DNA of 63,389 bases, counting the filler, from Octopus bimaculoides (taxonomy: Eukaryota), in assembly GCF_001194135.2 (NCBI RefSeq). It is 5 parts of 4 records of this genome, joined end to end, with 100 filler letters (N's around TTAATTAATTAA, not from the genome) between each part and the next. Parts side by side here need not be neighbours in the genome. Positions count along the whole stretch, not along the records: positions 40,188 to 57,232 come from NC_068983.1; 4 more parts are not named here. One strand, written 5' to 3'. This document shows, in pieces, positions 3,959 to 49,140 of this stretch. The notes below the pieces were generated by a model. That model searched no databases. It had not been told where the DNA came from and was given only the letters and a program-made list of their open reading frames with translations. The position numbers and the translations under genes were made by a program. The first letter of the stretch is position 1; the number at the start of each line of letters is the position of its first letter.

Positions 3959-4337
3959 NNNNNNNNNNNNNNNNNNNNNNNNNNNNNNNNNNNNNNNNNN
4001 NNNNNNNNNNNNNNNNNNNNNNNNNNNNNNNNNNNNNNNNNNNNNNNNNNNNNNNNNNNNNNNNNNNNNNNNNNNNNNNNNNNNNNNNNNNNNNNNNNNN
4101 NNNNNNNNNNNNNNNNNNNNNNNNNNNNNNNNNNNNNNNNNNNNNNNNNNNNNNNNNNNNNNNNNNNNNNNNNNNNNNNNNNNNNNNNNNNNNNNNNNNN
4201 NNNNNNNNNNNNNNNNNNNNNNNNNNNNNNNNNNNNNNNNNNNNNNNNNNNNNNNNNNNNNNNNNNNNNNNNNNNNNNNNNNNNNNNNNNNNNNNNNNNN
4301 NNNNGCAATAGTGGTAGAGGAATGTATAGTGAAGAAG

Positions 4338-4564
4338 GCGAGCTGGCAGAAACGTTAGCACGCTGGGCGAAATTCTTAGTGGTATTTCGTCTGCTGCTAC
4401 GTTCTGAGTTCAAATTCCGCCGAGGTCGACTTAGCCTTTCATCCATTCGGGGTCGATTAAATAAGTACCAGTTACGCACTGGGGTCGATGTAATCGACTT
4501 AATCCGTTTGTCTGTTCTTGTTTGTCCCCTCTATGTTTAGCCCCTTGTAGGCAATAAAGAATAT
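4338..4564 (+). mobile_element. Full-length SINE family A (tail X) with 18-bp TSD
   Basis: tRNA-like A box TGGCAGAAACGTTAG and B box GAGTTCAAATTCC. Flanked by GAATGTATAGTGAAGAAG at 4320-4337 and 4565-4582. Confidence 0.92.
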
Positions 4565-4934
4565 GAATGTATAGTGAAGAAGCTGCGAGAAGCGAACAGA
4601 TTTGATTTCCAACGAAGTGGATTGTATGTGGGTTATAAACACCTTACCAAGCGTAGTAACGACGGAGGAATTGAGGCCACAAATAATCATGAATGAACCG
4701 TAGAAGAAAATAAACTGTATAAGAACTGTATAAGAAGACTGTTAAATGAAACTGCGAGCTTTGGAGGACTCGTAAGCCATTCCATCATCATACTGTAAGT
4801 TACTCATTTCATTTTATCATTCGCTTTATGTACCCCACGTTTTGTATTGTAATGTCTGTCCTTGTATGTCCCCCCCTCTTTGTAATGAGACCTTAGTGCC
4901 TATAATAAAGATAAAAACTAGAATAATAATAGTA

Positions 4935-5155
4935 ATAATTCTTTCTACAATTGTCACAAAGCCTGAACTTTTAGGGGAGGTGGGGGCTAGTCCATTACAT
5001 TGAGCCCCGTTCTCAACTGGTACTTCTATTATCAACACCAGCATGATGAAAAGTAAAGTAGAACTCGGCAGAATTTGAACTCGGAATATAAATCCGGAAG
5101 AAATGCCGCTAAGCATTTTGTTTAGCATGCTAACGATTCTGCTAGGCTGCCGCCT
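4935..5155 (-). mobile_element. SINE family A (tail Y)
   Basis: Reverse head GCTAACGATTCTGCTAGGCTGCCGCCTT and reverse B box GAATTTGAACTC. Confidence 0.8.
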
Positions 5156-7234
5156 TAAACATTATTATTGTAAGCGTGGTGGACTAGCAAATTCGAGAAG
5201 ACCATTATTTTGTCACAACTGCAAAAACTTTTGGTAACGGACAAATCTGCCCGACCGGCGTTGACCTAGGGTTAAACAACAACAACAACAATGTCATACT
5301 ATCATAACTGTATCATTCTGATACACAAAATATTTCTATAAGGATTTGCTTTTACTTACCATTAAGTCTTTTGTCGACCTCCTCATCATAGAGGCTGGCA
5401 GAGAAGACGATGGGAAGCAACACTAAAAACAAAAGGACGAGCTTCATGTCTAAAAAATAAAAATAAACGACAGACAGACAGACAAATCGATAGATAGATA
5501 GATAAGGTCTTACTAGAGTATGTCAATTTGAAGTTCTAGGCTAGAAAGAAGAAATAAGGAAAGTCATTGAAATGTACTAAAAACTACAAGCAAAACTCAC
5601 TGAAATGTATGTGGGATACAATTTGTTAAAAAAAGGGAGCAAGGGGTTTTATATAGTAAATTATTTTTGACTAACATCTGTATTTTCTCATATCTCTGTA
5701 AACTTTACGAAATCAGCTGAACCAAGTTAATTAAAGATAAGTTTTGAGAGAAATAGACTCACAGCTGTTTAGTTTCCAGCAATATCGCCGTAAACTATAA
5801 ATATTTGGTTTGCAACTTTAGGGGGTTAATCAGTCGTGTTTGTTTTTGTTTTTTCTGGTGTACAAACTACCACTGGGCATTTTCAAATATAAGTCTAGTT
5901 TTTCAAAACCGAGACAAAGTCAACTGGACTGACATGAAGGTACTTGTGCATAAGGAAATTGTCACCCTCATTGTCCTGTNNNNNNNNNNNNNNNNNNNNN
6001 NNNNNNNNNNNNNNNNNNNNNNNNNNNNNNNNNNNNNNNNNNNNNNNNNNNNNNNNNNNNNNNNNNNNNNNNNNNNNNNNNNNNNNNNNNNNNNNNNNNN
6101 NNNNNNNNNNNNNNNNNNNNNGATCTAAAAGGATTACAGAGGTTCATAACATATCCTGTCCACTTACAAAGTACGCGTTGTGAGATGGCATGGTGGTTGA
6201 CCACTAATTAGCCCGATCACGAAGCCCTGTGATCAAAAGGCGCTCCGACCATGATCACCTCATCTTCTTTGCTTTTCGCATACAACGTGTTTAGTATTTA
6301 CATAAGGCGACCATCAGTCGAAGTTGACCATATTCTGCACAAGTATATGCTGGTCTATTACCATCGAAGAGAAGGTAACTCCGCATACAAATCCTGCATC
6401 TCGATAACTACTGGGTTCGTCACACTATTTCCACCACAACAATACAAGCATGGGGAACGAGAGATTGGATTGGCTCTGCACGAACCAAGCCTACTATAAC
6501 ATTCATCGTGCAGATTGTTCAGAAAACCAAGACACCAGCACAGAGCGCTTTCAAACTTTCTTCATAACTCTCGCGGCGAAGAACTTCGTACAACTGTATC
6601 TTGTTCAATCCTTATTCGTAGGAGCGACGAGAGAATGTAAGATAAAATGAGCTCTGATCAATCAACCCAATAAACGAAAGGCAATTCAACTGTGACCAAC
6701 TTATCATCTTTGCTTTTCACTTACCGTGTGTCTAAGGTTTCTATGGTCGAAGTTGACCGTGCACCTCTGTACATGAATATGCTGACCATGGTAAGCTATC
6801 TTCTATAAGACTGGTAGTTAATTATACATGCGAATCGCTCTTCGCTATGCCAATGGTGGTTATTCAAAGAAAAATCCGCCGCCTTGGGCTGATCTATCAG
6901 TCTCACCGCAGGCATTTATGTCAAACGATGACACAAGACATATTGTCTGATCCTCTCACTGCTCCGCCAACCCGTTGCTTTAATTTGCTTGAAGCCAGTG
7001 CATCTTATCTCAATTCACTTTCGAATTCAAATGGTAACTGAAGAATTTGATGAGGTTTTTTTTTTTTTTATCGGAAAAGAAACGCTTTGTCCTTCTCAAT
7101 TTCGACGTCTTCTTTCATTATTGCTGCAAGATTTAGTAAAATTACCTACTCCTCCATGCTAATAGAAGGGTCTTTATAATGTGAACCGGTTCCTGGAAAC
7201 TGTGGATAGTTGCAGAGGAATTTATTTTTCGTAT

Positions 7235-40187: not shown

Positions 40188-40385
40188 GTGCGGGTGACAC
40201 GTAAAAGCACCCACTACACTCTCTGAGTGGTTGGCGTTAGGAAGGGCATCCAGCTGTAGAAACTCTGCCAAATCAGACTGGAGCCTGGTGTTGCCATCCG
40301 GTTTCACCAGTCCTCAGTCAAATCGTCCAACCCATGCTAGCATGGAAAGCGGACGTTAAACGATGATGATGATGATGATGATGAT
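40188..40385 (+). mobile_element. Young RTE-type 3' tail (RTE 3' end or RTE-dependent SINE) with (GAT)n tail
   Basis: Homologous to the 3' UTR of the RTE at 54250-54450 (TTGGCGTTAGGAAGGGCATCC...CATGGAAAGCGGACGTTAAACGATGATG). Confidence 0.85.
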
Positions 40386-40469
40386 GGCTGCACATGTATG
40401 TGTGAGAAAGATAAAAAGATATTTGAGAAAAGTTGTATAGGTATACTGATCATTCCAATTGACACTCAC

Positions 40470-40541
40470 GAGTTCACTGTCTGTGTAACACTAGCACCAT
40501 CTTCAGGGAGGAACCTTTCTGACTTTGAGGTGGAATCTTTC
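40470..40541 (-). CDS. Candidate 72-nt exon (phase 2-2), probably the same gene as the giant exon
   Basis: Acceptor CTTCCTGTTCATTACTAATAG|, open frame KIPPQSQKGSSPEDGASVTQTVN, donor CTC|GTGAGT. Confidence 0.45.
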
Positions 40542-42039
40542 TATTAGTAATGAACAGGAAGACATATATATATTAAAGATAAACAGGTAGATGTGTAGAT
40601 GAATGATAAACAAATATGTGCTAATGAGTAACAAATAAATCATCTGCCTGTTCATGATGAACTACTAAATAATCCAAATACTATCACTAAATATTAGCAA
40701 GATGAAGTAAAGAAGAAACAGAGTTTCATGTTACATTTTACAATTTACAATTGATTTTTTTTACTCAATGCATACTAAGTTATTTATAAATTACACAGTA
40801 CATTGGTTAATTAAACATTACCTAATATATGAGTAACTAAAATATTTATACATTACATAATGGATATCTGATTTAGTGAAATATCTATACATCTAATATT
40901 TCAGTTAAGGTTATATTGATACAAGACCTAATCCATTTATTAATATATTTTTAAATAACTTATTCTGTGTGATTATGTTATATATATAGATTACATTATA
41001 TATATGTTACAAACTATTTAAAATAGACTAGTGTAATATTGAGAACCAAGACAGGCAGCTCTCACACACAAATATAAATATAAATTGTATTGGATCTGTT
41101 AGTATTGTAGGGATTTGAATCCTATCTGCAAGATACTCAGTTAGGGGTCATGAGTGAGCCACCACGGTTTCACATTATTAATCTATAAATTGACCAATCA
41201 GCATGAAGTTGTGGCATGATTTGGCTCCTCAGATGTTCTAGAATTCACTCCCTTTTCATGCCGCAGAAACCAGATGGTGCCTTACTAATCCAGGCAGCCT
41301 TGCACATTTGTGCAGACAGTCTCAGATATTTGCGTAGACCACCTTGGGTACTCACAGAAGGCAGACTGCTAAGACCAGACCATCTTCGGCACTCAGACAG
41401 ACCACCTTGAGCAAGAAACAACTTTGTACCACAGCTAGCCTTCTACAAGACACAGCTCAGTTCTCTTCTCCCAGTTGGCAGTTATATTGTCAGCATCTTT
41501 CTTTTGTAAACAGCCAACATAGTAAATCACATACAGCAATAAATATCTTAAAAGTCAAAAGTTTGTGAGTTTGCTTCAGACAAAGCAACCTCTTGACAGT
41601 ATCCAATAAAACCCAACCATCACCCTTTCTGTGCAACAAAAAAATTACTCCTTCTCCACAAAGGCACCCATTATTGACGTCCGTCACTACCTCATACCCT
41701 TGCCAATTCTCTCTCTCTCTCTCTCTCTCTCTCACCCATGTAGCAGCTCTGATTTCCATAGCTCAAAGTCCTGACTGTCTCTTCACTGCACTCTCACCCT
41801 AATCCCTATTTCTCCTATCATACTCTCACTCGAGCATTATCTCTCTGCCATTACTCCCTCCTCTAACACCTTTTGACCCCAATCACTGTTTCTCCCATCA
41901 TACCCTCACTCTTTCATGCACATAACCTACTTTTTTCTCTCTCACTTTCTTGTTCACCCTCTTGGTTATATTTTCTTAAATAAGCACACTGTAAAGCAGT
42001 GAGGACTCTTTAGTCTTGTGAAGTACAAGGCAATCTCGC

Positions 42040-42375
42040 TATTGCTAGTGTCATGATAAAATGCACCCAGTACACTCTGTAAAGTGGTTTACAAATGAGC
42101 GTAGATAACATAAGATAAAATCAAGAGATGTCTTTAGTTTGGCTAAAGATCAACCTCTCAAGTGTTAGTGGTACAATGAAATGCATTCAGTATACTTTGT
42201 ACAGTGGTTGGGGTTATAAAGGGCATCCAGACAGAAAACATATCAAAGATGGAATGCTCAAGCAAGTATATCATCCTCCAGCCCATTTAGGAGGGCAGTA
42301 ATTTCAAATAAGAGCTAATTTGGACTGTGACAAGCCATGCAACCTATGCCAGCATGGAAAACTGGCTTAATGATG
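42040..42375 (+). mobile_element. Old, CpG-decayed copies of the RTE-type 3' tail
   Basis: GTGGTTGGGGTTATAAAGGGCATCCAG and CAACCTATGCCAGCATGGAAAAC. Confidence 0.6.
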
Positions 42376-42534
42376 TTGAAGGTGGTGGTGGTAGTGGTGC
42401 TTGTGTTAGTGCTAATGCTGGTGGTGGTGGTGGTGATGATGATGATGACAACATTAGCACCGATGATGATCATGATGAGGATGACAATACATATACATAC
42501 ACTCACAAATGTAAACAGTTACACACAGACACAC

Positions 42535-42563
42535 TTCTATTTCAAACTGTCTACTCAATGCAC
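42535..42563 (-). CDS. Candidate 29-nt microexon (ALSRQFEIE)
   Basis: Branch-like CCTAAC and the acceptor TTTTGTTCTGTTGCAG|G. Possible donor GAA|GTGTGT. In frame with the giant exon through an 81-nt GT-AG intron. Confidence 0.4.
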
Positions 42564-42644
42564 CTGCAACAGAACAAAAGTTAGGACAAATAATATACAA
42601 GCAAAAACATTTAGCTCTAGTCTGTCTTTTTATAAGAGTTTTAC

Positions 42645-44925
42645 TTGCCTTTTCTAAATGTGTATCCTTTGAAGTCTCTGTGAAATTGTTGGGAATGAAA
42701 TTTACTTTGATAGATGAACTTTTTTGAGCATATTTCTCACAGTCTTTAGTCTCTTCACCAATGCAAGCTTGATTTTCAACAACCTGCGAATCCTTTGGTT
42801 TGGGATGAGTCACCTCTGCATCACCCACATATTCCTTAGATTTAAAGTGATTTTTTGTTGGAGAACTTACACCTGGAAAACTCTCTGAAGTAGAATTCAG
42901 ATGACATGTTTGATCTTGGGTCAAAGACAATTTCTCTCTTTTACAGGGTGAAAAAGACGAAGTATGATTGTTGATATTTTCCTTATTTATTTCCAGTTTC
43001 TCAGTAGTCAACCCCAAATCTGACTTTTGATTACAGCTACTCACAGAATTTTCTTTTGAAATTTCTTGTTTATTTGATTTTCTGTTGTTAGAAAATGTCA
43101 CCTGTGACGCCTTTTCAGACCAATGTGAGTTCTTTTTGTTTTGATTAATTATAGGAAAACTTTTGTCTGAAGGCATTTCTAAATTTTTGTTAGTATGATG
43201 ATTCTTATTAACTTTAGAGGCAGAGGTAATTTTAGCTTCATTAGTATTAGAAATTCTCAAAGGATCAATTGTTTTCAGCTCATTAGAAGACTCACTCTCA
43301 GAATGAAGATTACCAACATTTTTGTTTAATATTCCAGATGTAGTTATTTCAGACTCAGTAAACTGAGGTACTTCTCCACTTATCTCTTCTATATGATTGC
43401 TGAAGTGAACTTTGTGGGTTTGATGAGGCTTTAGTGCCACCTCAGATCTAAAATTGGCTGGGTCACTGTTTGTTGTTACTTCTCTCCCTGATCTTGGTTT
43501 ACCAGGGACAGTTTTGTTGACTTTAGCTTTTAATGAGACTTCTATTTTTGGTTCTATCTTAGCAGAATCAATATGATGGGCATTATAATTTGGTATTTCT
43601 TTTCTGTTGGAACCAGATTTAGTTGGGTCAGAACTGTGGTCTTTGCAATCTGGAGTTATTTCTGCTTTTGATATAGGCTTACTGTGGACAGTGTTGTGAA
43701 TCTTATTTTTTGGTATTACTTTTATTTCTAGTTTTGATTCAACAGAATCAATATGGTGGGCATTACAATTTGGCATTACTTCTGTCTCTGAAGTCAATTT
43801 AATAGGGTCAGTGCTGTGATCATTGTCATCTGATGACACCTCGATTTTTGAATCACAGGCTGTATTGTGGGTATCACTGCTTGGCATTACTTCTGTCTCT
43901 GGTTTAGATTTAACAGAATCAGTGTGGGGTATATTATTATTTAGCATTACCTCTGTTTCTGATTTGGGTATAGTGGGATCGATGTTGTGGGTAGAATTAT
44001 TTAGGATGTTTTCCCTCTCTAATAAGAAGTCTTCATGGTCAAAATGGGAAATAGAATTATTATTGACATTAATGACATTAAGAACTTCTGTGTCTTCTTC
44101 CACTTCAAGTTTAACATGATCAGTGTTTTGAATCTCCTTTACTTCTGGGTTGAGTTCAGCCAAGGTTTGGTCAGTCTGATGGTTTAATACTTTCGCTGTA
44201 TTTGGCGTCAGATTTATCTGGTCATTATCCTTACTGGCTGAGATTCCTTCAGTTTCTGGTCTCAATTTAGTCAGGTCTTTCTGATCATCACTGCAGTCCA
44301 GGTCTTTCCTTATATCTAGTTCTTCTCTAGACTGTTCATTCTTATGATAATCATTCTTTGATATTTCCTCCTCCTCTATCCCATCAGTGTGTGAAACATT
44401 TCTACATGAGATTCTCTCTATTTCTGGCCTGAGTTTAGGTAGATCAGAATGAATATCAACTTTGTTCAAGTCATTTTCTACTCCTTGCCTGATGTTGGAC
44501 TGATCAGTAATTTTGTCTTTATTCAAAACTTTCTCTGACCTCCAAAGGAACTGGTCACTAATATTTTCAGTTTTCTCAATCTCTGGTCTAATTTTGGACA
44601 GAGCAGTATGAGAACTACTGTTGTTTTGTATTTTCTCTTCTTCTAGTTTGTGTTTAGTTGGATCAGTGTGTTGGTCACCAATATCCAAGGTTTTCTCCCT
44701 CTCAGGCCAAAGTTTGAAATGGTCAGTGTGGTCACCACTTTTGTTCAAAACTTCCTCTAATTCAGAACTGACTCGAGGTTGGTCAGTGTGATGATACCCA
44801 GTGCTTTCTAATTTACTGTACATACTGCCACTCTGATGGAATACACTTGATACAAATTCTTCCTTTCCTTTTACTTCTTGAACCTCAGGTAAGATAGACT
44901 GCAGTTTGGAGTCTTTCTGTTTAAA
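42645..44925 (-). CDS. Giant internal exon (~760 aa) of an unidentified host gene; repetitive, probably disordered S/E/K/N/D/H/T-rich protein
   Basis: Stop-free frame of about 2.5 kb in AT-rich DNA. Acceptor TTGTTTCTTGTTACTCATCCATTTCAG| at 44926 (phase 0). Donors AAG|GCAAGT (42649/42648) or CAA|GTAAAA (42645/42644). Confidence 0.8.
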
Positions 44926-45351
44926 CTGAAATGGATGAGTAACAAGAAACAATGATTGAGTTTAAATTGAGACAGGTGAGAGGGGTGAAAGGGTGAAGAA
45001 GAAAGGTGGCATGTTTAGAGAGTTACAAACAAAACTTTAAAAAAGGGAAGAGACAGAGAGAGAGGCAGTTAGACATATCAGTTATAAATATATGTATGAA
45101 TGCAGTTGGTGGTGAGGGTGTAGAAGAGTTATAATTAGCTTAAAGCATTGTGGAATATGAAAAATGAGTGTTTTAGGAAGCTGCTACGATGCCACTGGAG
45201 CTATATGTATCAAAGCAACAATGACAATGAGATTATAATGCTACCTGGAAAAAATAATTTGTTCCTTATATTTTTTATGCACAGAAATGTAAAAGACTGG
45301 ATATTTAATTCACTCTCATGTCCTTAAGCACCAGTTCTTCATCCATGATAA

Positions 45352-45409
<58 letters not shown>

Positions 45410-45744
45410 TGTGTGTATGTGTGTGTATGTATGCGTGTATGTTTGATGTTACAACTTTCTCCCATCCTCTGCTACATTATATATACATACATACATACAN
45501 NNNNNNNNNTATATATATATATAATGTAGAAGAAGATGAGAAAAAGTTATCACATCTCCTGTAAGATTTGATTACCACATCTGCTACAAAATATATACGA
45601 GTAGCTGTGTTAACCACTATACCAAAGTAGCATTACAACTTTGATCATTCACATGAAGATACTTTAAGTAGTTTGCAATCTATCAATGAGAATTTCAGTC
45701 CACACAGTATCAAAGTATGATGTTTTATATATATATATATATAT

Positions 45745-45945
45745 ATATAAAACAGAGTTTGTGTGTGTGTGTGTGTGTGCGTGTGTGTGCACATATGCTC
45801 CTTATGGATTCAGAACCTGAGTTGCCGATTTTGACGCATGAGATATCAAAAAATCCAGTAATCTTTTGGCTATCAAATAAAGTATGTTTTTTGCACAACA
45901 ACTCTTTTTTACTACAAAAATAACCTCGGAAACAACGTCGGGTCA
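45745..45945 (+). mobile_element. Non-autonomous Helitron/Helentron-like (DINE/HINE-type) element
   Basis: ATATATAAAACAGAG + (TG)n + GCCGATTTTGACG, and a 3' hairpin-like CCTCGGAAACAACGTCGGGTC. Confidence 0.45.
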
Positions 45946-46139
45946 CACAATTTTGATGTCTTTAGCTAAGGGAGACAACTCTCCCTGAACAATTTTTATA
46001 TCTTACATAGAGCATATTGAGAAAATGTTTAAAATACATGGAGTTTTACCAAGGAATGAAACTTCAAAGATATACCACCAACTTTATTAGTTTTATCTAG
46101 TAAATAATCTTTTAATGTGAAGTATGTTTGTCTGTGTTT

Positions 46140-46310
46140 TGTTTAACCCAGAGTTGCCTCTGATGTAGCAGACCCATCGCATACATTTTTTTTTTCTTTT
46201 CTTCCTGAAATACTGTAAATCTGTGCCTTTCTTTTGATAAAAGGGTGTGTTTTAAGAGAGATTTGACTGCTATTCGTAGTAGCTCAAGTTACCACAGAGA
46301 CACCTCTGTG
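46140..46310 (+). repeat. Unclassified interspersed repeat (family C); related pieces at about 415-470 and 35900-36060
   Basis: Shared motif GAGAGATTTG(G/A)CTGCTATT(T)CTAG in three diverged copies. Confidence 0.45.
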
Positions 46311-46744
46311 TGCATGTATGTGTGTTTTGTTGTGGTGAAAAAAACACTTTTTCTCAGAACATTTTTTGCACAATAATTTTTAAAGAAATCTGAACATCTT
46401 TCTTACTGCTAACTTCAAATTACAATTGTTAATTGTTAGAAGTCAAGTAGACAGAGATGTACATATAGTGTTATGGTATAAACTGGAAGTTCAATACAAA
46501 GTTTTGAACTCATTATCTTGCGGTTAGTAATCCATTACCTTAAATTTGAAGCCATTAAGTCTTCAAATATTATTTTACTGATGGGGTATTGCCTTCAAAA
46601 ATTTAATTGATCATACTGACTTTAGTAAATATTTCAATCTGGTATTTATCTTATAGATCTCTGCTTGATGAACTTTGAGACATAGTGGGACACAATACTC
46701 GATTTAACAACAAATGTAAACACACACACATATTAAGTGCAAGA

Positions 46745-46860
46745 ATGACTGTGTGGTTGAGAAGTTTGCTTCCCAACCACATAGTTCCACAGTGTTTTCT
46801 ATTATAGCCTTAGATCAACCACAGACTTGTGACTGAATTTGGTAGACAGAAACTGCAGTG
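46745..46860 (+). mobile_element. SINE family B, CpG-decayed
   Basis: GACTGTGTGGTTGAGAAGTTTGCTTCCCAACCACATAG...GGTAGACAGAAACTG (GACGG in other copies). Confidence 0.7.
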
Positions 46861-46899
46861 TTGTTCATTAGAGAATGACCAAAAAACATGCTTATAAAG

Positions 46900-47014
46900 A
46901 AGAGTTGTTTGCTTCATAACCCTTGTGTGCCGATTCTACCCATGAGAAAGGAACAAGTAATACAATGTGGCTGTGGGTCATAACACCCAGGCAACACCAG
47001 GGTGCATTGCTAGT
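46900..47014 (+). mobile_element. Helitron-like 3' end
   Basis: Hairpin CCCAGG-CAACA-CCAGGG followed by CTAG|T at 47010-47014. Confidence 0.5.
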
Positions 47015-47482
47015 ACATATATATATATATATATAAATATATATACCAAGCATTCTCAATGAGGGCAAAAATTTAGCTGAGTAGAGGGATAATTTGTGAC
47101 AAACAAATGGATATATATTTTCTAAAAACTTTATATAAATGTAAGCTTTCATAAGTAATTATATTTTATGATGGCAGGTTAAAAACTGGCCATGTATTCA
47201 TACACTTACATATGACTAATGTAATGAAATGAAATTTGAGGAAAATAGTACCATAGGGGAATATTATAAATAATAAGGGTATGACACTTACCTAAAGAGT
47301 ATTTTTTAAAAAATTCCTCCTGCATATGGAGGAACATAAAACAACAAGGTAATCTCCAAGCATCAGTATCTTTATCTTTAAAGGAATTTTAAGTTGCCTT
47401 TTTTTTCCTTTTTCTTTTTTTTATGAAATTGAAAGTAGCAGACTGTATTATTTAGGTCATTTACAATTAGTTGAGATATTTT

Positions 47483-49140
47483 GGATCTTTTCTGTTTGGC
47501 TTTCACTTTTCAATTCCTTTCTGATTCCAATTGATTTCCATTTCTTTCAATTACAATTGATTTCAAATTTGGTGTAGTGATGTAGTTTTGTATGCTAATT
47601 ATGGAAATGAAATTTATTCTGGCCATAAATTAATAAACAAAAAGTTAATAGCTTTTAAACTTTGCAAATGTAATTTTAGCCAATCGAAAGCTAGTGGCAT
47701 ATTGGTGTCTGTTCCCATAGCAACAAACCATCAGTTGCTGTTCTAATAATCTGCTTTCCATCCACGTGAAATTTGCCATCTACATTTTTTTGAGAAACGG
47801 ATGGATATTTTCAGTTGTTTTCCTGTTTTTACTCATCTGTTACTATCCTGATAATCTGTGTATTTCTGAGAAACAAATAGATATTTTTGGTTGTGTTTTC
47901 TTGAATGTTTTGAACCAAAATAGAAGTATGACCACAGCCAACTCATGCAATATTTCATATATGATGGAGAAATTAAAAACTGACAACAATGCTGCTTCTT
48001 ACTTGCAAGAAAAGGGTGTTATCCCTTAAAGGAAATTATGCACACAAAAAGTATGAAGAAAAAGATTCTTGGTGGGAACATTTACAGGCAGTGCTTCCAA
48101 AATGGAAGATACATGGTTGGAAGGTGCCACCCTTCCTCTTAGTACTGTGTTTCCTTTACTCAAGAAATTGACTTCAGTCCAGTTTTATGGAGATGAGCCA
48201 TTGCACAGCTGTTGATAACAACAGCTATGTTAATGAAATATCTGCAAAGGACCTGCTCTGCAATCCAATTCAGATTGGCGGTCCTGAGAAGATTGTTGAT
48301 ATAAACAAAACAGTCTTCTCAAGATGTAATTACAACCAAGGAAGGGTCCTACCTGTGCAGAGTGTATTTGGAGAAATGTACCGTGAGACCAGACATGTTT
48401 TTCTTTATGCAGTGCCATGTCAGAATCGTGACACACTGGAGAAATGCCTACTCTCACATTCCTGAAATGGATGGTTATAATTTTCGATATACAACAGTGA
48501 ACTACAGTGTTGAGTTTATTAACTCAAAAAAAGGTACCCACCTGCAACAAATGGAAAGCACGTGGACCTCTGTAAAATGAAGTAATAAACGACACTGTGA
48601 CACTTACCATTCTATGGTTGACTCATATCTCTGTGAGTTTTTGTGGTGCAGGAGTTACAAAAATTGTAATTTGATAAACTCCTAGAGTGCATTGCAAAAT
48701 TTTGCTTTTGAATTATCACCACAAAATATGTATTGTTTACATAAACTGAACTACAGTTTGTTTTTAGTAATTTAACATTCAATTTGCTTGTTTCTTTTTG
48801 TAAATTTCAGCAAAGAAAAAAATTTCATTGAGAATCTTTCCTTTTTCTTGCTATTTACTTGCCTGTTCCAACAGTTCACATTATTTATTCATTAAAATTT
48901 ATTAAAAATTTCATCGTTGAATGTTTTGTCATTGTAATGTTGTCATCATGCACAAAATGCCAGCTTCCAAATCCTGTTTTCTGATTGTTACCCAAAACTT
49001 TAAGCCCCTGTAGCATTTTTAAAAACAAAATTTCTGGAACAAGTGAATAACATCAGAATCAGCATGAAAGATTGCATTAATTTGAAATTTTTCCCTTAAC
49101 TTTAAAATTTCAACAAGTGAAAGCCAAACAGAAAAGATCT
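47483..49140 (+). mobile_element. Merlin (IS1595/ISXO2-type) DNA transposon with both TIRs and 8-bp TSD; transposase decayed
   Basis: 25-bp perfect TIRs at 47484-47508 and 49115-49139. TSD GATATTTT at 47475-47482 and 49141-49148. Motifs IQIGGPEKIVDINKTVFSRCNYNQGRV, FLYAVP, TVNYSVEF...GTHLQQMESTW and DSYLCEFLW. Confidence 0.9.

What the first reader, a model, noticed from the sequence alone, without database searches (positions are those of the whole stretch)
42645..44925. Giant exon built from a degenerate 60-nt minisatellite with a 180-nt higher-order period
The protein repeats a ~20-aa unit (HTDQPRVSSELEEVLNKSGD, HTDHFKLWPEREKTLDIGDQ, HSDLPKLRPEIERISCRNVS, HSTDPIKLTSETEVMPNCNA). A 60-aa super-period is visible in the DNA: CAGAATCAATATG(G/A)TGGGCATTA recurs at 43563 and 43743, exactly 180 nt apart. 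The units are highly diverged yet 760 codons stay stop-free in AT-rich DNA, which suggests selection on the frame. Periodic H-T/I-D motifs in an acidic disordered chain could serve as a spacer, metal-binding or phase-separating region. I recognise no homolog, so it may be a lineage-specific exon added to a conserved gene.
Basis: partly seen in the sequence, partly recalled or inferred. Interest (0 to 1): 0.75.

Follow-up and report, generated by a model that had tools for sequence, protein, structure and literature searches.

The report
Repeat-built disordered exon of octopus orphan gene
This is a real 2.3-kb protein-coding exon on the minus strand of an octopus gene already annotated as "uncharacterized protein LOC115209948"; more than half of it is an old, decayed array of 20-amino-acid repeats, and selection keeps its reading frame open while barely constraining its amino acids, which is ordinary for a flexible linker region.

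Summary
A 759-codon, stop-free exon lies on the minus strand at 44925..42649. It has a clear 60-nt periodicity (lag-60 z=6.7) and a weaker 180-nt super-period.

Four corrections:
- Only the first 58% of the exon (43459-44793) is repetitive.
- The exon ends at a GC donor at 42649, not at 42645.
- The array is ancient and fixed, not a minisatellite. TRF misses it, and three species show no unit-sized copy-number change.
- The exon is not without homologs. It corresponds to residues 569-1319 of Octopus sinensis XP_036357464.1 (LOC115209948, 90% aa identity). It is also present in O. vulgaris and in one more distant octopod.

Across the three species the exon's DNA diverges as fast as its introns, and nonsynonymous change is near the neutral expectation (ratio about 0.85, P=0.07). 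Yet none of about 11 expected stop codons occurred, and all 11 indels are multiples of 3. AlphaFold gives pLDDT 31 throughout.

The whole gene has no Pfam domain and no detected relative outside octopods, and its neighbouring large exon evolves the same way. So "new exon in a conserved gene" is not supported. The periodic histidines are not preferentially conserved.

Best reading: a disordered spacer exon of a fast-evolving, octopus-restricted gene. Interest is low.

The parts
42649..44925 (-). Giant internal coding exon: 2277 nt, 759 codons, phase 0/0. Orthologous to residues 569-1319 of O. sinensis XP_036357464.1 (LOC115209948).
   Evidence: ORF. Orthologs. Junctions FKQKD... and ...THLEK|KDATSK in the annotated proteins. 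Exon length is divisible by 3 in all three species (2277, 2265, 2256).
43459..44793 (-). Decayed tandem array of about 22 unit lengths of 60 nt / 20 aa (residues 45-489). About 15 units are clearly recognisable, with consensus roughly H-[TS]-D-x-x-K-x-x-P-E-x-E-....
   Evidence: Autocorrelation. Repeat families D1-D4 with spacings in multiples of 60. Unit HMM hits fall only in residues 45-488 (the model was built from these same units, so this only bounds the array).
43459..43989 (-). Three higher-order super-units (57-60 aa, 171-180 nt), residues 313-489.
   Evidence: D1: 128-nt copies at 70% identity with spacings of 180 and 171 nt. Units three apart are 65% identical against 54-59% otherwise. 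Exact 23-mer 180 nt apart.
42649..43458 (-). Non-repetitive S/N/K-rich tail of the exon (270 aa, pI 7.3).
   Evidence: No periodicity. No unit-HMM hits. Composition.
44926..44950 (-). 3' splice site of the upstream intron: pyrimidine-rich tract and AG (…tgtttcttgttactcatccatttcag|TTTAAACAG).
   Evidence: Conserved in L001 and in O. vulgaris L002. The annotated protein junction is QIL|FKQ.
42643..42648 (-). 5' splice site of the downstream intron, a GC donor (AAG|GCAAGT).
   Evidence: Window. O. vulgaris has the same GC donor. The more distant octopod has AAG|GTAAGT. The annotated junction THLEK|KDATSK uses this site.
40541..42648 (-). Intron between the giant exon and the next exon (GC-AG).
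   Evidence: Colinear with O. vulgaris at 94.3% identity, with many indels not divisible by 3.
40469..40540 (-). Next coding exon of the same gene: 72 nt, phase 0/0, KDSTSKSERFLPEDGASVTQTVNS.
   Evidence: tblastn with P0002 residues 1321-1344. Splice sites ctaatag|AAAGAT…AACTCG|gtgagt.

Best explanation
The region is a constitutive, phase-0/phase-0 internal coding exon on the minus strand (44925..42649). It belongs to the window species' ortholog of Octopus sinensis LOC115209948. That gene spans about 124 kb, has multiple exons, has no recognisable domain, and was detected only in octopods.

**Origin (inferred).** The first 58% of the exon arose by tandem duplication of a 60-nt (20-aa) unit, and later of a 180-nt triple unit. 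Both events happened well before the three compared species split. Unit-to-unit distance is 0.47-0.70 substitutions per site, against 0.13 for the deepest species pair. The array has since decayed without gaining or losing units.

**Product (inferred).** The exon encodes a hydrophilic, mildly acidic chain that is predicted to be disordered. It sits between a Ser-rich N-terminal part and a short, Lys-rich C-terminal part whose sequence looks like a nuclear localisation signal.

**Selection (shown).** Selection acts on the integrity of the reading frame: no stop codons, and only in-frame indels. It acts hardly at all on which amino acids are encoded.

**Function (inferred).** The exon most likely works as a flexible spacer or bulk disordered region. 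It must be translated through so that the C-terminal exons are made and the mRNA escapes nonsense-mediated decay.
For: **Real exon of an annotated gene**
- phmmer against 1.84 billion representatives gives one hit, P0002 = XP_036357464.1, with 90% identity over query residues 1-758 = protein residues 569-1319.
- The O. vulgaris locus L002 shows the same exon between a 1-kb upstream exon and seven small downstream exons.
- The next exon is present in the window at 40469-40540.
- The acceptor and donor sites are conserved in three species.

**Frame under selection**
- Exon lengths are 2277, 2265 and 2256 nt, all divisible by 3, with no stops.
- Placing the observed substitutions at random gives 11.0 new stops on average, with a minimum of 2 in 2000 runs. 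None is observed.
- All 8 exon indels against O. vulgaris are multiples of 3, compared with 8 of 24 in the introns (Fisher P=0.0012). Across both comparisons the exon has 11 distinct indel events, all in frame.

**Amino acids nearly free**
- Exon nucleotide identity is 95.0%, against 94.3% and 91.8% for the introns. Against L001 it is 88.2%, against 86-91% for the flanks.
- Substitutions are spread evenly over codon positions (81/89/99). NG86 omega is 0.55, inside the neutral simulation range of 0.51-0.88.
- The three-lineage N/S ratio relative to neutral is 0.85, P=0.07.
- No constraint on hydropathy, hydrophobic residue count or net charge is detectable.

**Disorder**
- AF2 gives pLDDT 31 over all 759 residues and no secondary structure.
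- GRAVY is -1.08, and 72% of residues are S/E/N/K/T/D/Q/P/G/H.

**Old, fixed array**
- No indel longer than 15 nt separates the species.
Against: - No transcript or peptide data could be examined here. Inclusion of the exon rests on computational gene models from two related species.
- The neutral simulation is approximate: it uses a majority-rule ancestor and applies the substitution spectrum uniformly. With only three species, weak or motif-level constraint could be missed. The two short lineages each show a slightly lower nonsynonymous fraction (0.63-0.64 against 0.72 expected, P=0.07-0.09).
- The AF2 run had only three close sequences, so a low pLDDT is weak evidence for disorder.
- The spacer role and the nuclear location are inferences from composition alone.
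- The upstream exon of the gene is not in this piece, so gene continuity in the window species is unverified.
Confidence: 0.8

Rival explanations
1. The repeats form a functional motif array. Periodic His / Asp / Pro-Glu-x-Glu positions would bind metal ions or a partner protein many times over, or drive phase separation through a defined 'sticker' pattern. On this view the 20-aa register itself is what selection maintains.
For: - About 15 units still share H-[TS]-D at their start and an acidic P-E-x-E core after long divergence.
- The first position of the unit is invariant in 13 of 15 units and position 12 in 15 of 15.
- No unit has been lost or gained among the three species.
- His makes up 5.1% of residues (39/759), which I believe is about twice the usual frequency (from general knowledge).
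Against: - Histidines in the array are invariant in 19 of 25 cases, against a 71% baseline (permutation P=0.38).
- The repeat region and the non-repetitive tail have the same invariant fraction (0.711 against 0.714).
- The overall N/S ratio is close to neutral.
- There is no detectable constraint on charge or hydropathy.
- Unit similarity is what is expected from shared ancestry plus neutral decay.
Confidence: 0.12
2. The open frame is not functional coding sequence. It would be a recently dead or never-translated ORF (pseudo-exon, gene-model artefact) that has simply not yet picked up stops.
For: - The exon diverges as fast as its introns.
- Amino-acid change is statistically indistinguishable from neutral.
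- No domain or distant homolog was found.
- No expression data were available.
Against: - About 11 stops are expected across the three-species tree and none is seen, in 0 of 2000 simulations.
- All 11 indels are in frame, against one third in the introns.
- The splice sites are conserved, including a compensated consensus GC donor.
- The upstream exon shows the same pattern of in-frame indels only.
- Two independent annotations, RefSeq for O. sinensis and the O. vulgaris annotation, include the exon.
Confidence: 0.04
3. The ORF belongs to a transposable element or other repeated genomic element, or it is an active, copy-number-variable minisatellite.
For: - The piece is rich in mobile-element debris: reverse-transcriptase fragments at 54736-56989 and dispersed repeats at 40193-40386 and 54237-54669.
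- The exon has internal tandem structure.
Against: - It sits at a single orthologous position, colinear with its flanks, in three species.
- Only one cluster of relatives turned up among 1.84 billion representatives, and one Logan ORF in the 5.8-billion-cluster search.
- It has no TE domain in Pfam.
- No other copy exists in the 40-kb O. vulgaris locus or elsewhere in the piece.
- No unit-sized indels separate the species, and TRF is negative.
Confidence: 0.02

Closest known systems
Octopus sinensis LOC115209948 (XP_036357464.1 / XP_029634447.1) and O. vulgaris CAI9720443.1, all annotated 'uncharacterized' or 'hypothetical' protein
   Same: Orthologous exon: 90% aa and 95% nt identity, the same splice junctions, the same repeat units in the same order, and the same following exon.
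   Different: Different species, with eight small in-frame indels. In the window piece the upstream 1-kb exon is not found within 12 kb. In O. vulgaris it lies 750 nt away.
Large single exons that encode degenerate tandem repeats in disordered proteins, for example ALMS1 exon 8 (47-aa repeats), MKI67 exon 13 (Ki-67 repeats), the mucin central PTS exons and involucrin (from general knowledge, not tested here)
   Same: One unusually long exon. It was built by internal tandem duplication, partly with a higher-order period. The repeats are imperfect. The product is hydrophilic and predicted disordered. Sequence turnover is rapid while the frame is preserved.
   Different: No sequence relationship to any of them: Pfam and PDB searches were negative. 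The unit length (20 aa) and motif are different. Unlike mucins or involucrin, repeat number did not change among the species compared.
Cephalopod histidine-rich structural proteins (histidine-rich beak proteins, suckerins, reflectins; from general knowledge)
   Same: A cephalopod-restricted, repetitive protein with recurring histidines.
   Different: His is only 5% here, and Gly, Ala, Tyr and Met are not enriched. By eye, the annotated N-terminus shows no obvious signal peptide and the C-terminus is Lys-rich. No sequence similarity to these proteins was detected. Not a member.

Membership tests
Ortholog of Octopus LOC115209948 (coding exon) | Sequence orthology over the full exon, with colinear flanks | tested here: met
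   90% aa identity over residues 1-758 to P0002. Window 45119-40416 is colinear with O. vulgaris L002 4040-9293 at about 91-95% nt identity.
Ortholog of Octopus LOC115209948 (coding exon) | Splice sites that reproduce the annotated protein junctions | tested here: met
   tttcag|TTTAAACAG matches QIL|FKQ. GAAAAG|GCAAGT matches THLEK|KDATSK. The next exon is at 40540-40469.
Ortholog of Octopus LOC115209948 (coding exon) | Intact reading frame maintained by selection | tested here: met
   0 stops against 11.0 expected. 11 of 11 indels are in frame.
Ortholog of Octopus LOC115209948 (coding exon) | Transcription and inclusion in mRNA in the window species | not testable with these tools
   No RNA-seq or proteomics access. 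Support comes only from the gene models of related species.
Minisatellite / VNTR | Head-to-tail units of 10-100 bp | tested here: met
   60-nt periodicity with z=6.7 at lag 60. Repeat families have spacings in multiples of 60.
Minisatellite / VNTR | Units similar enough to be recognised as an array by Tandem Repeats Finder and to sustain slippage or unequal exchange | tested here: not met
   TRF at score 30 reports no array of period 60 or 180. Units are 45-73% identical.
Minisatellite / VNTR | Copy-number variation between relatives | tested here: not met
   The largest exon indel among the three species is 15 nt. None is 60 or 180 nt. Within-population variation was not tested.
Transposable-element ORF | TE protein domain (RT, transposase, integrase, gag) | tested here: not met
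   Pfam shows nothing above noise for the exon or the whole protein.
Transposable-element ORF | Multiple dispersed copies | tested here: not met
   One representative cluster in 1.84 billion proteins. No second copy in the piece or in the 40-kb L002 locus. A whole-genome copy count was not possible.
Intrinsically disordered tandem-repeat region | Low-hydrophobicity, polar or charged composition with no predicted fold | tested here: met
   GRAVY -1.08, 72% polar or charged residues, only 26 aromatics. AF2 gives pLDDT below 50 at all 759 residues and no secondary structure, on a shallow alignment.
Histidine-based metal-binding repeat | Periodic His, with acidic residues, preferentially conserved | tested here: not met
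   The periodic His is present, but its conservation (19/25) is no higher than background (P=0.38).
Histidine-based metal-binding repeat | Demonstrated metal binding | not testable with these tools
   This needs a biochemical assay.
Lineage-specific exon inserted in a conserved gene | The rest of the gene has conserved domains or homologs outside the lineage and evolves more slowly than the exon | tested here: not met
   - No Pfam or PDB hit for any part of P0002.
- The N-terminal query found only an octopod ORF at 71% identity. The C-terminal query found nothing. That index is incomplete, because it missed P0002 itself.
- The upstream exon has 88.5% nt identity, against 88.2% for the giant exon in the same species pair.

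The most novel reading that the evidence does not exclude
An octopod-restricted orphan gene keeps more than 1500 codons open across 124 kb while its protein sequence drifts almost neutrally. This would mean the selected property is not the sequence itself. It could be a bulk property of a very long disordered chain, such as length, charge pattern, or nuclear condensate or scaffold formation. Alternatively, the regularly spaced H-x-D / P-E-x-E units could act as a weakly constrained multivalent 'sticker' array. Either case would be a clean natural example of frame-only selection on a repeat-born exon in a cephalopod-specific gene.
Probability: 0.12. Interest if true: 0.45.

Novelty: new member of a known kind. 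Interest (0 to 1): 0.2.

Why it matters
It is a genuine coding exon that is already present in the gene models of related octopuses, and not an unknown kind of element.

Its modest value is as a well-documented example of a known pattern. A long exon was born from tandem duplication and then decayed. Selection now demonstrably protects only the reading frame, and the amino-acid sequence changes at nearly the intronic rate.

The exon also belongs to a gene with no detectable relatives outside octopods. That makes it one more entry in the catalogue of cephalopod-restricted genes of unknown function. If the gene proved to have a specific tissue role, the repeat array would be a natural place to look for a multivalent interaction surface.

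Tried and rejected
- **Tandem Repeats Finder on the piece.** It found no 60- or 180-nt array. Periodicity had to be shown by autocorrelation and seed-extension repeats.
- **Pfam on the exon, on the whole O. sinensis protein and on its three non-exon parts.** Only noise, for example ThiG at E=0.059.
- **PDB sequence search with the exon and with the whole protein.** Nothing significant. The best hit was a Rab5 GEF at E=0.29.
- **Rfam on the piece.** No matches.
- **The search for homologous proteins.**
  - The exon query returned only one Logan ORF and the N-terminal query one other; the C-terminal query returned nothing.
  - The index missed P0002 even when queried with P0002's own C-terminus, so negatives from this tool are weak.
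- **Literature search for SRR11869391 and LOC115209948.** No papers.
- **Fetching the O. sinensis locus.** P0002 was not on record, and the P0005 gene range, about 124 kb, was too long to return DNA. I used the O. vulgaris locus instead.
- **AF2 of the C-terminal 205 aa of the O. sinensis protein.**
  - Mean pLDDT was 52, with four weak helices.
  - That is too poor for a meaningful fold search, so I ran no Foldseek job.
- **Test for composition-level constraint and for extra conservation of His.** Both were negative.
- **The 63-codon extension of the ORF past the donor site.** I rejected it as coding. It stays open in the window and in L001, but in O. vulgaris it is broken by 5-nt and 4-nt indels, and the annotated junction lies at the GC donor.
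Full report
**1. What is in the sequence**

The piece 40188-57232 has one outstanding open frame. It is on the minus strand, 836 codons long, from 44961 down to 42454. The next longest stop-free run anywhere in the piece is 147 codons. The other five frames of the same stretch carry 34-106 stops, and base shuffles give 55 stops on average with a minimum of 33.

The frame is bounded by good splice signals.
- At the 5' end there is a pyrimidine tract and AG...catccatttcag|TTTAAACAG, with the exon starting at 44925.
- At the 3' end the sequence is GAAAAG|GCAAGT, with the exon ending at 42649.

- A more distant octopod has the perfect consensus AAG|GTAAGT at the position I propose.
- O. vulgaris has the same GC donor as the window.
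- The annotated O. sinensis and O. vulgaris proteins join ...THLEK directly to KDATSK..., which only that site allows.

The exon is therefore 2277 nt, or 759 codons, and starts and ends in phase 0.

**2. The repeats**

In the first 1500 nt of the exon, base matching at lag 60 is 0.428. The background at other lags divisible by 3 is 0.297 ± 0.020, so z=6.7. Lag 120 gives z=5.5 and lag 180 gives z=3.7. The last 777 nt show no periodicity.

Seed-extension finds a 35-nt family of seven copies; all but two of the spacings are 60 or 120 nt. It also finds a 128-nt block present three times, at spacings of 180 and 171 nt and 70% identity.

Among the nine most regular units (residues 313-489), units three apart are 65% identical, against 54-59% at other offsets. 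A profile of the units finds about 15 clear copies and a few decayed ones. All lie in residues 45-488, and none lies in the tail or in any other exon of the full-length protein. That profile was built from these same units, so it only delimits the array.

The 60-nt and 180-nt periods are thus real, but they cover only 43459-44793, which is 58% of the exon. The array is also too decayed for Tandem Repeats Finder to detect.

**3. Relatives and the gene**

An exhaustive phmmer search of 1.84 billion representative proteins returned a single hit. P0002 is 1525 aa long and 90% identical to the exon over its residues 569-1319. It is XP_036357464.1, 'uncharacterized protein LOC115209948 isoform X2' of Octopus sinensis. 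Its cluster also holds isoform X1 and two O. vulgaris 'hypothetical' proteins. Both isoforms contain the exon.

The gene spans about 124 kb in O. sinensis.

In the O. vulgaris locus L002 the exon is 4237-6492. A 1-kb exon lies 750 nt upstream of it, and seven small exons spread over 31 kb lie downstream. The first of these small exons is present in the window at 40540-40469, with its own AG and GT.

A third, more distant ortholog came from a Logan assembly of SRR11869391 (species unknown). This is L001, at 76-77% aa identity.

The window is colinear with O. vulgaris from 45119 down to 40416. Upstream of 45119 the match stops, and the upstream exon is not found anywhere in the piece.

**4. How it evolves**

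Nucleotide identities are as follows.

| Comparison | Giant exon | Introns / flanks |
|---|---|---|
| Window vs O. vulgaris | 95.0% | 94.3% downstream intron, 91.8% upstream intron |
| Window vs L001 | 88.2% | 86-91% |

Differences are spread evenly over the codon positions (81/89/99).

Nei-Gojobori omega for window against L001 is 0.55 (bootstrap 0.43-0.72). Placing the same substitutions at random gives 0.67 (0.51-0.88), so the observed value is not distinguishable from neutrality.

With the three species and a majority-rule ancestor, 69.6% of changes are nonsynonymous, against 73.0% expected. The ratio to neutral is 0.85, with P=0.07. Hydropathy, hydrophobic residue count and net charge change as expected under random substitution.

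The frame, by contrast, is clearly protected.
- The same simulations create 11.0 stop codons on average and never fewer than 2 in 2000 runs. None is observed.
- The exon's 11 distinct indel events have lengths of 3, 6, 9 or 15 nt. All are multiples of 3.
- In the adjacent introns only 8 of 24 indels are multiples of 3 (Fisher P=0.0012).
- No indel approaches 60 nt, so repeat number is fixed.

Unit-to-unit JC distances are 0.47-0.70, against 0.13 for the deepest species pair. This puts the duplications several times further back than that split.

The neighbouring 1-kb exon behaves in the same way. It is 88.5% identical between the distant octopod and O. vulgaris, and its only indels are 6 and 3 nt, while its introns carry indels of 1, 2, 5, 7, 22 and 86 nt among others. 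The 72-nt next exon differs at 7 nt and 6 of 24 residues. The giant exon is therefore not a fast-evolving island in a conserved gene. The parts of the gene that could be compared all evolve this way.

**5. What the product looks like**

The exon product has GRAVY -1.08 and pI 5.7. The repeat part has pI 5.2 and the tail pI 7.3. There are 130 acidic and 98 basic residues, 39 His, and only 26 aromatic residues.

AlphaFold2, run with the three orthologs as the alignment, gives pLDDT 31 with every residue below 50 and no secondary structure. This is consistent with disorder, though the alignment was shallow.

Nothing in Pfam or PDB matches the exon or any other part of the protein. The C-terminal 205 aa of the O. 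sinensis protein fold only weakly (pLDDT 52, four helices). They end in a Lys-rich tail, which suggests nuclear targeting. That reading is an inference from composition only.

The periodic histidines are invariant in 19 of 25 cases, against 71% for all residues (P=0.38). The repeat region and the tail have the same invariant fraction.

**6. Interpretation**

These points are shown:
- It is a real internal coding exon of an annotated but uncharacterised octopus gene.
- It was partly built by ancient tandem duplication.
- Its frame is maintained by selection.
- Its amino-acid sequence is almost unconstrained.

These points are inferred:
- It acts as a disordered spacer or bulk region.
- The main fitness cost of a stop or frameshift is loss of the downstream exons, or of the mRNA through nonsense-mediated decay.

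Rivals:
- A motif or metal-binding array is not excluded, but the conservation data do not support it.
- A non-functional ORF is rejected by the stop and indel tests.
- A TE-derived ORF or an active minisatellite is rejected by the single orthologous copy, the absence of a TE domain and the fixed copy number.

**7. Novelty**

The kind of feature is familiar: a long exon of degenerate tandem repeats encoding a disordered region. The exon itself is already in public gene models. What is new is only the description of its repeat architecture and its frame-only mode of selection. Interest is low.

**8. Limits**

- No expression data were available.
- Only three species could be compared.
- The word-indexed protein search is evidently incomplete for these proteins (one search missed P0002 itself). 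'No relatives outside octopods' therefore rests mainly on the exhaustive search with the exon and on the Pfam and PDB negatives for the rest of the protein.

Noticed in passing
window 42643-42648 (- strand); L002 6493-6498; L001 2463-2468: The intron after the giant exon is a GC-AG intron (AAG|GCAAGT) in the window species and in O. vulgaris. The more distant octopod has the canonical AAG|GTAAGT. This is a T/C difference at the +2 donor position within the genus-level clade.
   Followed up: partly
window 45119-57232, with a 10-N gap at 45500-45509: Colinearity with the O. vulgaris locus stops at 45119. The roughly 1-kb upstream exon lies 750 nt upstream in O. vulgaris but is absent from the 12 kb upstream here. 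The cause could be an assembly gap or misjoin, or a large insertion in this species.
   Followed up: partly
window 54736-56989 (- strand): A string of broken ORFs looks like a decayed non-LTR retrotransposon. Fragment 55707-55916 matches RVT_1 weakly (E=7e-4, below Pfam's cut-off). Window 54736-55174 also matches two other places in the O. vulgaris locus at 76-85%.
   Followed up: partly
window 40193-40386 and 54237-54669: A dispersed repeat of about 190 nt (SINE-like) has six or more copies in the 40-kb O. vulgaris locus at 70-91% identity, on both strands.
   Followed up: no
window 52833-53657: This stretch matches O. vulgaris L002 161-968 in inverted orientation at 81%, lower than the 91-95% of orthologous DNA. 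It is probably another dispersed element. By eye, the ORF at 52911-53204 (-) resembles a mariner-type transposase fragment, but Pfam gave no hit.
   Followed up: partly
window 42454-42648 (- strand): The reading frame continues 65 codons past the donor site into the intron. It is also open in the distant octopod, where this stretch is 90.6% identical with no indels. In O. vulgaris it is broken by 5-nt and 4-nt indels, so it is most likely a chance read-through and not coding.
   Followed up: yes
L002 2515-3486; L003 376-1449: The upstream 1-kb exon of the same gene shows the same evolutionary pattern as the giant exon. It has 88.5% nt and 71% aa identity between the distant octopod and O. vulgaris/O. 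sinensis, and its only indels are in frame (6 and 3 nt).
   Followed up: partly
window 40469-40540 (- strand): The next 72-nt exon differs from O. vulgaris at 7 nt (9.7%, above the intron's 5.7%), and 6 of its 24 residues are changed. The sample is too small to call positive selection.
   Followed up: no
window 42381-42484: Impure triplet runs (GGT/GAT/TGA) lie in the intron just downstream of the exon. This is the site of 27-nt length differences against O. vulgaris and a 12-nt difference against the distant octopod.
   Followed up: no
tool behaviour: The word-indexed protein search did not return XP_036357464.1. This held both for a query 90% identical to half of that protein and for its own C-terminal 185 residues. 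The cluster look-up nevertheless shows it is a representative in that collection. Negatives from that tool are unreliable for these eukaryotic proteins.
   Followed up: partly
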